DNA from: Macrostomum lignano
Lineage: Eukaryota
NCBI GenBank assembly: GCA_002269645.1
Contig: NIVC01001468.1
Span: 1-64,000, forward strand
Direction: 5' to 3'
DNA length: 64,000 nucleotides
Shown: in pieces, positions 58,701 to 61,700 of the stretch
How the letters are laid out: each line of letters starts with the position of its first letter
How positions within the stretch are numbered: the stretch's first letter is position 1
The notes under the pieces: generated by a model
Told to the model about the DNA's origin: nothing
Database searches by the model: none
Seen by the model: only the letters and a program-made list of their open reading frames with translations
Program-made: the position numbers and the translations under genes

Positions 58701-61700
58701 CAGGGGAGAGGGAGATGGGTGGCCTACGCCATCCCCATTTCCTATCCTAGCCTTCCATTCCTCCCCTTCCGTGCTCCTCTCTTCCCTAGCTAGCTAGCAT
58801 CAATTCCCCAAACCGATTCAGCGGTCTCCCTATCTCCCCAATCCCCTGCCCTGCTTCGGGTGACCAACCAAAGCCGGGCTCGCTTGTGCAGCCAGCCTCC
58901 TCGTTTGCCTCACCTATTTGACGCAGAGATTCGGTAGTTCGACTCTCAGCCTCTTAGGGATAGATCCGCTGCTTCCGCAATTTAGTTTGAAACCTTTGCT
59001 AGCCAGCCCTGGCCATATTCTCATGCTGCTGCCACCAATATTGCTGCTTCTGCTGGTGCCGCCCTGCTATGTGGCTTGGCAGCCCAGACCGCAGCAGCCC
59101 TCGCTTCTCTATGGCCCCTCGTTTGCTAATGACTGCTCCGACCCCGACACCTGCACTGCAGTGCCCTCGGCGCCCAGAGATCTTCGAGCCATCGTGTCCA
59201 GCATCGAGCTCGGCCACTCGACCATGCCAGTGGTGGATTTGTCCTGGAAACCGCCAGACACCATCAATAGTCCTCGGATTGAAGAGTACCAGCTGACCGT
59301 CTCTGTCATCGAGCCGCCCGAGCTGGCACAGCTGATCAAGAAGGAAGTGCTGTTCATCAGCCGGGACAGCTCGGGCAAACGGCTGCAGAGCGAGCTCAAG
59401 CCTGGTGTCACCTACAACATCAGCCTTGCCGCCAAGAACAACGAGGGCTACGGGCCCAAGACTACTATCATGGTTAAGACTGAGGAGGCCGGTGAGTGTC
59501 CGAGTTGTGCTCGGTGGGGAAGCTGATGAGTGAGTGTTCGGGTTGTCGGTGAGTGTCCGGGTTGTCGGTGAGTGTCCGGGTTGTTGGTGAGTGTCCGGGT
59601 TGTCGGTGAGTGTCCGGGTTGTCGGTGAGTGTCCGGGTTGTTGGTGAGTGTCCGGGTTGTCGGTGAGTGTCCGGGTTGTCGGTGAGTGTCCGGGTTGTCG
59701 GTGAGTGTCCGGGTTGTCGGTGAGTGTCTGGGTTGTCGGTGAGTGTCCGGGTTGTCGGTGAGTGTCTGGGTTGTCGGTGAGTGGAGATGTCGGTGAGTGT
59801 CCAGGTTGTTGGTAAGTGTCCGGGTTGTCGGTGAGTGTCCGGATTGTCGGTGAGTGTCCGGATTGTCGGTGAGTGTCCGGGTTATTGGTGAGTGTCTGGG
59901 TTGTCGGTGAGTGTCCGGGTTGTCAGTGAGTGTCCGGATTGTGTGGGGGGGGGAAGCTGGTGAGTGGCTGCGTTGTCCGAGTTTGCCCCGTTTTAAACAA
60001 ACCGTCAGGTTGTCTCCCTTAGCTGTGGGAAATTTCTTCGCCAGAGACGAGTGGCTGAAAAATAGCATCGCCATCCGTCTTCTTCTTCTTCTTTGCTGGC
60101 TCTCTCACTCTTCAACTAAGCTGCAGAATCCGCAGAGCAAGATGCCTCATCAGTCGCTTCTCAACAATATATATATATATATATGAAGGTCTCTCTCTCT
60201 CTCAATTTGAGCTCAACTCGGGGGCAAGGGGAATTCCTCAAGATGGCTAAGAGAGAGGCTTAGCCCCGGGATAGGGCCGCAGTTCCGCAGAGCAGCGGTG
60301 AAGAAGGCTGGGGTGGAAATTGCGGAAACAGCGGCAGCAGCGGCACAAGTAGGTGAAGAAGGGAGGAGCAGCTGAGGAATAAATGCTGGGCAGCACAGTG
60401 AGGCGGGGCCGTGAGTCATCTGCTGCATTCGACCCCATCATTGCCGGATGAATCTCTGCTAGTCGAGGACTCGCTGCTTCTAGAAGGAATTAATTGAAAT
60501 CACCGGGGCAACGGGGAGGGAGATCGGTCTGGCAGATATATTGGATTTTTTCCCACCCGCTGACAGGAGCTGAATGGGCTGCAAACCAATCTGTTGCAGA
60601 CTGACGGCTCGTGGGAGTTTTCTAGGAATATATAGCTTTTTTATTAATTTATTAGAAGTCATTTCTCTGTAGTCAATCAAGTACTATAGATATATATCTG
60701 TATCTAAGAGTAGTAGTAGTATAAGAAATAATTTTTCGAATTAAATAATAGGAGTTTTTAGGGCCTCAAAATTCTCAGATTGTTCAAGCGTAAAGCAAGG
60801 CACTCTACGATTCCTAGATTGGTCAGAGGTTACAGCAAGGTTCTCTACGAATCTTGATTGGTCAGAAGTTGAATTGAGGCTCTCTACGATTCTGTGATTG
60901 ATCAGAGGTTGAATTGAGGCTCTTTACGATTATCTGATTGGTCAAAGATTGACACGATTCTTACATTTGTGAAAGGTTGAACTAAGGCTATCTACAATTC
61001 TTAGATTGTTCGGGGGTTAACTCAAGGCTCTCTACGATTCTCTGATTAATCTGAGGTTTAATTGATGCTCTCTACGATTCTCTGATTGGTCCGAGGTTGA
61101 ATTGAGGCTCTCTACGATTCTGTGATTGGTCAGAGGTTGGATTGAGGCTCTCTACGATTCTCTGATTGGTCCGAGGTTGAATTGAATCTCTCTACGATTC
61201 TCTGATTGGTCCGAGGTTGAATTGAATCTCTCTACGATTCTCTGATTGGTCCGAGGTTGAATTGAAGCTCTGTACGATTCTCTGATTGGTCCGAGGTTGA
61301 ATTGAAGCTCTCTACGATTCTCTGATTGATCTGAGGTTGAATTGAAGCTCTCTACGATTCTCTGATTGGTCCGAGGTTGAATTGAAGCTCTCTACGATTC
61401 TCTGATTGGTCCGAGGTTGAATTGAATCTCTCTACGATTCTCTGATTGGTTTAAGATTGAACCAAGGCTCTCTACGATTCTCTGATTGCTTTAAGATTGA
61501 ACCAAGGCTCTCTACGATTCTCAGATTGGTCCGAGGTTGAATTGAAGCTCTATACGATTCTCTGATTGGTCCGAGGTTGAATTGAGGCTCTCTACGATTC
61601 TCTGATTGCTTTAAGATTGAACCAAGGCTCTCTACGATTCTCAGATTGGTCCGAGGTTGAATTGAAGCTCTCTACGATTCTCTGATTGCTTTAAGATTAA

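What the first reader, a model, noticed from the sequence alone, without database searches (positions are those of the whole stretch)
59023..59161. Second signal peptide inside intron 10: internally initiated short LAR
Seen: the 'intron' just before exon 11 is open in frame for 81 codons. It contains ATG + [19 protein letters not shown], which resembles exon 1 (both start MLLP). The 59161 acceptor has a poor pyrimidine tract, as expected under coding constraint. GC-box-like CCGCCC motifs lie at ~58306 and ~58374. Known: C. elegans ptp-3 produces Ig-less short receptors from internal promoters. Inference: a short isoform (FN3-6 onward + TM) lacking all Ig ligand sites. If the 59492 donor is skipped, 59023-59526 alone encodes a 167-aa secreted single-FN3 protein.
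Basis: partly seen in the sequence, partly recalled or inferred. Interest (0 to 1): 0.85.

Follow-up and report, generated by a model that had tools for sequence, protein, structure and literature searches.

The report
Possible internal start in flatworm LAR
Just upstream of the sixth fibronectin exon of a Macrostomum lignano LAR-type receptor phosphatase gene lies an in-frame ATG followed by a signal-peptide-like leader that looks like coding sequence, so an Ig-less short receptor like C. elegans PTP-3B is plausible, but no transcript evidence was available.

Summary
ATG 59023 opens [20 protein letters not shown]… and reads in frame through the AG at 59160-61 into the FN6 exon.

The gene is a LAR-type receptor tyrosine phosphatase of the flatworm Macrostomum lignano. 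An RNA-seq-based GenBank model (PAA53983.1) splices FN5 directly to 59162. So the leader is intronic in the full-length mRNA.

In favour of a real alternative first exon:
- The 138 nt before FN6 are the only acceptor-proximal sequence, of 11 in the gene, with exon-like composition (GC3 0.70, positive synonymous-codon score).
- The hydrophobic core matches the exon-1 signal peptide (2.83 vs 2.81). Only 2 of 81 random ATG ORFs reach 2.8.
- There is no other ATG in the 305 nt upstream.

Against, or uninformative:
- Long open frames upstream of exons are common here (about 4 of 11 acceptors).
- The leader has no basic n-region, and Tyr sits at −3 of the only plausible cleavage site.
- The pyrimidine-tract and GC-box arguments carry no weight.
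- The one other genomic copy fetched is about 99% identical, so conservation says nothing.
- No annotated protein starts at the leader.

Verdict: partly supported (about 0.5). If true, it is a new member of a known kind.

The parts
4597..4744 (+). Exon 1 of the full-length LAR gene. It encodes the canonical signal peptide [29 protein letters not shown]|G, with an A-x-A cleavage site and Arg in the n-region. Used here as the comparator.
49070..49381 (+). FN5 exon. Its phase-1 donor (G|gtgagt) is the canonical upstream partner of the 59161 acceptor.
58306..58379 (+). Two CCGCCC motifs (58306-11 and 58374-79). Their density is not above background, and the first reads CCGACC in the second genomic copy.
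58718..59022 (+). A 305-nt stretch with no ATG directly upstream of the start codon. It contains a C/T-rich run (about 58725-58860) and a CAG at 58889-91. Its codon usage is non-coding-like. It is a candidate 5' UTR or promoter-proximal region (inferred).
59023..59076 (+). ATG plus an 18-residue hydrophobic leader, [18 protein letters not shown]. It is a putative signal peptide. The only plausible cleavage site is A18|W19, which has Tyr at -3.
59077..59161 (+). A 28-residue linker, [28 protein letters not shown], containing two Cys. It ends in the cag acceptor used by the full-length mRNA.
59162..59491 (+).
59492..59526 (+). Donor GTGAGT and the in-frame TGA (59524-26) that would end a 167-aa read-through product.
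61866..62149 (+). FN7 exon.
62528..63876 (+). Exon encoding FN8, FN9, the juxtamembrane region and the transmembrane segment. The phosphatase exons lie beyond the window end.

Best explanation
59023-59161 is the coding part of an alternative first exon that is contiguous with the FN6 exon of the M. lignano LAR-type receptor phosphatase gene.

Proposed mechanism: a transcript begins inside the 9.8-kb intron, somewhere in the ATG-free 58.7-59.0 kb stretch. It starts either at an internal promoter or at a (trans-)splice acceptor such as the CAG at 58889-91. It does not use the 59161 acceptor. It is translated from ATG 59023.

The hydrophobic leader would direct the protein into the ER. The product would be an Ig-less receptor made of a short Cys-containing linker, FN6-FN9, the transmembrane segment and the two phosphatase domains. 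It would lack the Ig1-3 ligand sites and FN1-5.

Shown:
- the ORF, its frame and its contiguity with FN6;
- exon-like composition;
- a hydrophobic core as strong as that of exon 1;
- canonical FN5->FN6 splicing in the full-length mRNA;
- the LAR identity of the gene.

Inferred:
- transcription from within the intron;
- translation from ATG 59023;
- ER targeting and cleavage;
- function of the short receptor.
For: 1. Composition at acceptors. The 138 nt upstream of each of 11 acceptors were read in the exon's frame. Only the FN6 one combines no stops, GC 0.61, GC3 0.70 and a synonymous-codon score of +0.20. The other ten have GC3 0.35-0.48 and scores of -0.22 to -0.65; eight of them contain 1-5 stops, and FN2b and FN4 are stop-free.
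2. Codon position bias. Leader GC1/2/3 is 0.63/0.50/0.70, against exon GC3 of 0.69-0.92. The open stretch upstream of the ATG has a flat 0.55/0.51/0.55.
3. Codon scores. The codon log-likelihood is +0.17 bit per codon, best in frame 0. That compares with 0.29-0.31 for exon 1 and its signal-peptide part, 0.34-0.55 for the other exons, and an intron mean of -0.70. Among GC-matched, stop-free, non-repeat intron windows, 5% reach the full score and 0.4% reach the synonymous score.
4. Hydrophobic core. The leader scores 2.83, against 2.81 for the exon-1 signal peptide. Only 2 of 81 non-repeat first-ATG ORFs elsewhere in the window reach 2.8.
5. ATG depletion. There is no ATG in the 305 nt upstream. 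Shuffles expect 2.6, with P(0)=0.06.
6. A control. The similar-looking [14 protein letters not shown]… upstream of the FN4 exon is compositionally non-coding (score -0.56).
7. Copies. The leader is identical in a second genomic copy (0 differences in 139 nt) and in a UniProt model from another assembly.
8. Exon phases. All FN3 exons checked (FN3-FN6) are phase 1-1 and FN7 starts in phase 1, so a first exon fused to FN6 keeps the downstream frame.
9. Precedent (PMC4418752). C. elegans ptp-3 makes three transcripts from independent promoters. PTP-3B has only FN3 domains. A human short PTPRF isoform with the same architecture is cited there.
Against: - No transcript, CAGE/RAMPAGE or 5' end data could be reached.
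- The RNA-seq-based GenBank model (P0001, PAA53983.1) uses the 59161 acceptor. No protein starting at the leader was found among M. lignano models.
- The only model that contains the leader (P0151) has it internally, after a frame-shifted FN5. That is a gene-prediction artefact.
- The leader has no Lys or Arg before the hydrophobic core, and no canonical (-3,-1) cleavage site.
- The signal-peptide part is a CTG-rich, low-complexity run. Such a run by itself gives an open frame, poly-Leu and preferred codons. The non-repetitive linker alone scores only +0.11, and its frame is ambiguous (frame 0 0.17, frame 1 0.21).
- The whole 58.3-59.2 kb block is GC-rich, not only the leader.
- Open frames of 45 codons or more upstream of exons are common in this gene.
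- The second copy is about 99% identical across the intron too, so conservation does not discriminate. P(0 differences in 139 nt) is about 0.14 at the local intron rate.
- No core promoter element was recognised, and there is no CpG-island contrast.
Confidence: 0.5

Rival explanations
1. Chance ORF. A GC-rich, CTG-rich unique block happens to abut the FN6 exon. It stays open in the exon's frame and happens to carry an ATG followed by poly-Leu. It is ordinary intron, spliced out of all functional mRNAs.
For: - About 4 of 11 acceptors have 45 or more open codons upstream in frame. One of them (FN4) also has an ATG followed by a hydrophobic run.
- A CTG-type low-complexity run jointly explains the open frame, the Leu run and the preferred codons. 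The linker alone is only weakly coding-like.
- The n-region and the -3 residue are atypical for a signal peptide.
- The RNA-seq-based annotation splices the region out, and no model starts there.
- The GC boxes and the acceptor argument are void.
Against: - The joint occurrence is rare. The synonymous-codon score lies in the top 0.4% of GC-matched, stop-free windows.
- The hydrophobic core is in the top 2-3% of random ATG ORFs.
- There is an ATG-free 305 nt upstream (P about 0.06).
- The frame-0 composition pattern is unlike all ten other intron 3' ends.
Confidence: 0.35
2. Relic or cryptic first exon. The sequence once served, or serves only at noise level, as an alternative start. It keeps some coding-like composition but produces no functional protein today.
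For: - Its codon scores are intermediate: +0.17 for the full score and +0.20 for the synonymous score. These are below every other exon in the gene, including exon 1 (0.31 and 0.40).
- The cleavage site is imperfect.
Against: - The frame is intact in all three available copies or models.
- Nothing distinguishes a relic from a weakly expressed functional exon with the present data.
Confidence: 0.08
3. The region is coding as a 5' extension of the FN6 exon in the full-length mRNA, through an alternative upstream 3' splice site. It would insert extra residues between FN5 and FN6.
For: - Phase-compatible AGs exist at 58873, 58891, 58957, 58963 and 59002.
- The UniProt model P0151 reads the leader internally.
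Against: - P0151 reaches it from a frame-shifted FN5, through the AG at 59005-06. That AG is out of phase with the true donor.
- Every phase-compatible site lies upstream of the ATG. Using one would include 58.87-59.02 kb, which is compositionally non-coding (-0.35 to -0.47).
- It would put an 18-residue transmembrane-like segment in the middle of the ectodomain.
Confidence: 0.03

Closest known systems
C. elegans PTP-3B, the short isoform of the LAR-type phosphatase PTP-3 (Ackley et al. 2005, as summarised in PMC4418752)
   Same: It comes from an internal, independent start within the LAR gene. The product lacks the three Ig domains and the membrane-distal FN3 domains, and keeps the membrane-proximal FN3 domains, the TM segment and both phosphatase domains.
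   Different: PTP-3B has 5 FN3 domains. The product proposed here would have 4 (FN6-FN9). PTP-3B is experimentally established, with its own promoter, rescue and localisation data. Here nothing is shown beyond sequence. There is no sequence similarity between the leaders; none was found, and similarity is not expected for signal peptides.
Human short PTPRF/LAR isoform (UniProt H0Y4H1, cited in PMC4418752)
   Same: The architecture is described as FN3 domains only, plus tandem phosphatase domains. This suggests that Ig-less LAR isoforms are widespread.
   Different: I did not examine that entry. Its start and its evidence level are unknown to me.
Alternative splicing of LAR FN4-FN8 in vertebrates (PMC2133008)
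   Same: It also diversifies the FN3 region of the same receptor family. In this window the FN4 exon (47514-47840) behaves as a cassette exon, absent from both annotated models.
   Different: Cassette splicing keeps the Ig domains and the exon-1 signal peptide. The finding here concerns a new N-terminus.

Membership tests
LAR-type (type IIa) receptor protein tyrosine phosphatase | Three N-terminal Ig domains with LAR-family sequence | tested here: met
   The Ig1 exon hits the LAR/PTPRS/PTPRD Ig1 domain at about 1e-14. The Ig3-FN1 exon hits PTPRD/PTPRS residues 218-327 at 3e-26. The Ig2 exons lie at 15.8 kb and 24.9 kb.
LAR-type (type IIa) receptor protein tyrosine phosphatase | A run of 8-9 FN3 domains followed by a single transmembrane segment | tested here: met
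   Pfam fn3 matches the exons at 34.6 (FN1), 45.4, 47.5, 49.0, 59.2, 61.9 and 62.5-63.2 kb (two domains). The FN2 exons at 37.8/39.7 kb were assigned from their sequence and the P0001 model, not scanned. A hydrophobic segment, [29 protein letters not shown], ends the last exon.
LAR-type (type IIa) receptor protein tyrosine phosphatase | Tandem intracellular phosphatase domains D1 and D2 | tested here: met
   These are not in the window. In the second genomic copy (L001), exons that are 73-77% identical to the phosphatase domain of an invertebrate LAR lie 6-9 kb downstream of the TM exon, with a further D2-like match.
PTP-3B-like Ig-less short LAR isoform | Its own in-frame start codon and secretory leader directly preceding a membrane-proximal FN3 exon | tested here: inconclusive
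   The ATG, the hydrophobic leader and the coding-like composition are present. The leader is atypical, and translation is not shown.
PTP-3B-like Ig-less short LAR isoform | An independent transcription start inside the gene, with transcript evidence | not testable with these tools
   No RNA-seq, RAMPAGE or spliced-leader read data could be reached. The annotated models give no such transcript. Literature supplements hold only Mlig000129.g2 and g7, without structures.
Eukaryotic cleavable signal peptide (von Heijne tripartite model) | A hydrophobic h-region of about 7-15 residues near the N-terminus | tested here: met
   [11 protein letters not shown] has a mean Kyte-Doolittle value of 2.83 over 10 residues, equal to the exon-1 signal peptide.
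Eukaryotic cleavable signal peptide (von Heijne tripartite model) | A positively charged n-region | tested here: not met
   Only Met precedes the h-region. The first basic residue is Arg22, downstream of it.
Eukaryotic cleavable signal peptide (von Heijne tripartite model) | Small, uncharged residues at -3 and -1 of a cleavage site 3-8 residues after the h-region | tested here: not met
   No site passes the rule. The best candidate, CYVA|W, has Ala at -1 but Tyr at -3. Pro13-Pro14 sit at -6 and -5, as is usual. SignalP was not available.

The most novel reading that the evidence does not exclude
An Ig-less LAR receptor with its own leader may be an ancient bilaterian feature, seen in a nematode, possibly in human, and now in a flatworm. 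In M. lignano it might not need an internal promoter. The long C/T-rich tract (58725-58860) followed by the CAG at 58889-91 could be a spliced-leader trans-splice acceptor. That would cut the short mRNA out of the full-length pre-mRNA, and ATG 59023 would then be the first genomic AUG, 131 nt downstream.
Probability: 0.1. Interest if true: 0.6.

Novelty: new member of a known kind. Interest (0 to 1): 0.35.

Why it matters
LAR-family receptors bind proteoglycans and synaptic partners through Ig1-3. An isoform without these domains signals differently, as shown for C. elegans PTP-3B in morphogenesis and axon guidance. A flatworm counterpart would suggest that this two-receptor design is old. M. 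lignano allows transgenesis, so the idea could be tested there. As it stands, this is a sequence-based candidate, not a demonstrated isoform.

Tried and rejected
- **Protein searches.** Searches with leader+FN6 and with the 450-aa last exon gave no hits. P0001 shares long identical stretches with both queries yet was missed, so these negatives are uninformative.
- **Exact look-ups.** The 167-aa ORF, the last exon and P0151 are not on record.
- **Conservation.** The only other genomic copy fetched (L001) is about 99% identical in the intron as well, so there is no power.
- **Duplication of exon 1.** Rejected. DNA matches are only 9-15 nt.
- **Transposable-element origin of 58.0-59.2 kb.** There is no other copy in the window.
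- **CpG island.** CpG observed/expected is 0.63-0.78 here, within the window's range.
- **GC boxes.** They are at background density, and one is not shared by the second copy.
- **Weak pyrimidine tract as a sign of coding constraint.** Rejected.
- **Bacterial-type promoter and terminator scan.** Irrelevant for a eukaryote and at chance level.
- **Rfam and tRNA scans.** Nothing found.
- **Alternative in-phase acceptors inside the leader.** None exist. The in-phase ones are all upstream of the ATG.
- **Spliced leader joined at 59161.** Read by hand from the published spliced-leader sequence, which ends in ATG, the spliced leader's own ATG would be out of frame with FN6.
- **Supplementary tables of four M. 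lignano papers.** They held only two gene ids of the cluster, without structures.

Full report
**What is there.** The window is eukaryotic genomic DNA. It carries, on the + strand, a large gene with Ig and FN3 exons separated by introns full of minisatellites.
- ATG 59023 opens [46 protein letters not shown].
- This runs in frame through cag|TG (59159-61) into VPSAPRDL…, an exon with a Pfam fn3 match.
- The frame is open from the TGA at 58861-63, which is 99 codons.
- Skipping the donor at 59492 gives a 167-aa ORF.
- Exon 1 at 4597 starts MLLPRPLL….
- CCGCCC is at 58306 and 58374.

**Identity of the gene and organism.**
- The Ig3-FN1 exon matches PTPRD/PTPRS at corresponding residues with E=3e-26. 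The Ig1 exon matches LAR-family Ig1 at about 1e-14.
- An exhaustive HMMER search with the hypothetical short isoform found one near-identical protein, P0001. It is PAA53983.1, BOX15_Mlig000129g4, from Macrostomum lignano assembly GCA_002269645.1.
- Its contig (L001) is a second copy of the locus. It is 97-99% identical to the window in unique sequence.
- L001 carries phosphatase D1/D2 exons 6-9 kb downstream of the TM exon.
- The gene is therefore a genuine LAR-type RPTP with 3 Ig domains, 9 FN3 domains, a TM segment and two PTP domains.

**The canonical splice.** P0001 comes from an RNA-seq-guided annotation (PMC5730564). It reads …[11 protein letters not shown]|VPSAPRDL…. This joins the FN5 donor (49381, phase 1) to the acceptor at 59161 (phase 1). 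All FN3 exons checked (FN3-FN6) are phase 1-1, and FN7 starts in phase 1.

- The acceptor's pyrimidine fraction is 0.58. The other acceptors range from 0.53 to 0.84, and three others are at or below 0.58.
- CCGCCC occurs about 0.5 times per kb outside one tandem array. The 58306 copy reads CCGACC in L001.
- The likeness to exon 1 is four residues plus poly-Leu. The DNA shares only 9-15-nt CTG-type matches.
- A long open frame upstream of an exon is common here. FN2b, FN4 and FN6 have more than 46 open codons, and FN8 has 45.
- The FN4 exon even has its own upstream in-frame [13 protein letters not shown]….

**Arguments that hold.**
1. Composition. Read in the exon's frame, the 138 nt before FN6 have GC 0.61, GC3 0.70 and a synonymous-codon score of +0.20. 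The ten other intron ends have GC 0.34-0.50, GC3 0.35-0.48 and scores of -0.22 to -0.65.
2. Leader GC1/2/3 is 0.63/0.50/0.70, which is exon-like. The open part upstream of the ATG is flat, at 0.55/0.51/0.55.
3. Codon log-likelihood is +0.17 bit per codon in frame 0.
   - Exon 1 and its signal-peptide part score 0.29-0.31.
   - The other exons score 0.34-0.55.
   - The upstream open part scores -0.47.
   - The FN4-upstream control scores -0.56.
4. Against GC-matched, stop-free, non-repeat intron windows (764 windows from about 40 loci), 5% reach the full score and 0.4% reach the synonymous score.
5. The hydrophobic core scores 2.83, against 2.81 for the exon-1 signal peptide. Only 2 of 81 non-repeat first-ATG ORFs elsewhere reach 2.8.
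6. No ATG occurs in the 305 nt upstream. Shuffles expect 2.6, with P(0)=0.06.

**Caveats.**
- The signal-peptide part is CTG-rich and low in complexity. That alone favours an open frame, Leu residues and preferred codons.
- The 28-codon linker alone scores only +0.11. By the full score its frame is ambiguous.
- The whole 58.3-59.2 kb block is GC-rich.
- By the classical rules the leader has no basic n-region. Its only plausible cleavage site (CYVA|W) has Tyr at -3, whereas exon 1 has a textbook A-x-A site. SignalP could not be run.
- Window and L001 differ at 0 of 139 leader positions. They also differ at only 14 of 1023 positions in the flanking intron and 27 of 3966 in exons, so conservation is uninformative.

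**Annotation evidence.**
- A search with P0001 returned only one further M. lignano model, P0151 (UniProt A0A1I8J799).
- P0151 contains …[29 protein letters not shown]…[12 protein letters not shown] internally.
- Mapping shows that it reads FN5 in a shifted frame and enters at the AG at 59005-06, which is out of phase with the true donor. This is a prediction artefact.
- It shows only that the ORF exists in a further assembly and is acceptable to a gene finder.
- No model starts at the leader.
- Supplementary tables mention only Mlig000129.g2 and g7, without structures.

**Mechanism.**
- The best reading, at about 0.5, is a first exon fused to FN6. It would be transcribed from within the intron and translated from 59023. 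The product would be an Ig-less receptor with FN6-FN9, the TM segment and the PTP domains.
- This parallels C. elegans PTP-3B. The ptp-3 locus produces three transcripts from independent promoters, and PTP-3B has five FN3 domains. A similar human PTPRF isoform is cited in the same paper (PMC4418752).
- M. lignano trans-splices 30-39% of its genes. Its spliced leader ends in ATG, and the trans-acceptor motif is [T/C]TNCAG (PMC8629364; PMC5730564).
- So a trans-splice acceptor in the intron is an alternative way to make the 5' end. One candidate is the CAG at 58889-91, which follows a long C/T tract. This is speculation.
- The main rival, at about 0.35, is a chance ORF in a GC- and CTG-rich block.

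**Verdict.** This is a plausible candidate but not a demonstrated one. If real, it is a new member of a known kind of isoform, of moderate interest. The 167-aa secreted single-FN3 product has no support beyond the position of a stop codon.

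Noticed in passing
window 47514-47840: The FN4 exon is a good fn3 match (E=7e-10) with exon-like codon usage. It is nevertheless absent from both annotated M. lignano protein models, which join FN3 directly to FN5 (…CKTMEF|NPDAPED…). It is probably a cassette exon, reminiscent of FN4-8 splicing in vertebrate LAR. It also has a 77-codon open frame upstream with [13 protein letters not shown]…, which is compositionally non-coding.
   Followed up: partly
window 10613-10657: The UniProt model A0A1I8J799 starts [13 protein letters not shown] here and splices to the Ig1 exon, bypassing the exon-1 signal peptide. 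This short ORF scored among the most coding-like non-repeat windows in the intron scan (+0.34 bit per codon). It is either another alternative 5' exon or a prediction artefact.
   Followed up: no
window 41966-42034: The same UniProt model inserts a 17-residue segment ([17 protein letters not shown]) between FN2 and FN3. It maps next to a tandem repeat. The RNA-seq-based model lacks it.
   Followed up: no
window 59530-59942 (and the true donor at 59492): A 19-nt minisatellite, about 22 copies of GTGAGTGTCCGGGTTGTCG. Each unit begins with a consensus splice donor, and the real FN6 donor has the same GTGAGTGTCCG. The second copy (L001) has a different arrangement here, with a duplicated 38-nt unit.
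   Followed up: partly
L001 about 31,300 (window about 63,214) and the FN5 exon in the assembly behind UniProt A0A1I8J799: The GenBank model ends in a frame-shifted tail (…[24 protein letters not shown]) relative to the window. The UniProt model reads FN5 in a shifted frame. These are single-base indels in other copies or assemblies: either assembly errors or decaying duplicate copies in this polyploid genome.
   Followed up: partly
window 62238-62406 and 2163-2327: A dispersed repeat of about 170 bp, 89% identical between the two places and SINE-like. One copy sits in the FN7-FN8 intron. ARAGORN calls no tRNA in it.
   Followed up: partly
window 13.5-14.8, 38-39.7, 49.5-50.1, 50.8-51.4, 52.0-53.4, 54.3-55.1 and 57.1-58.0 kb: The introns are dominated by long minisatellite arrays that stay open in several reading frames. 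This inflates any ORF-based or stop-free statistic in this genome.
   Followed up: partly
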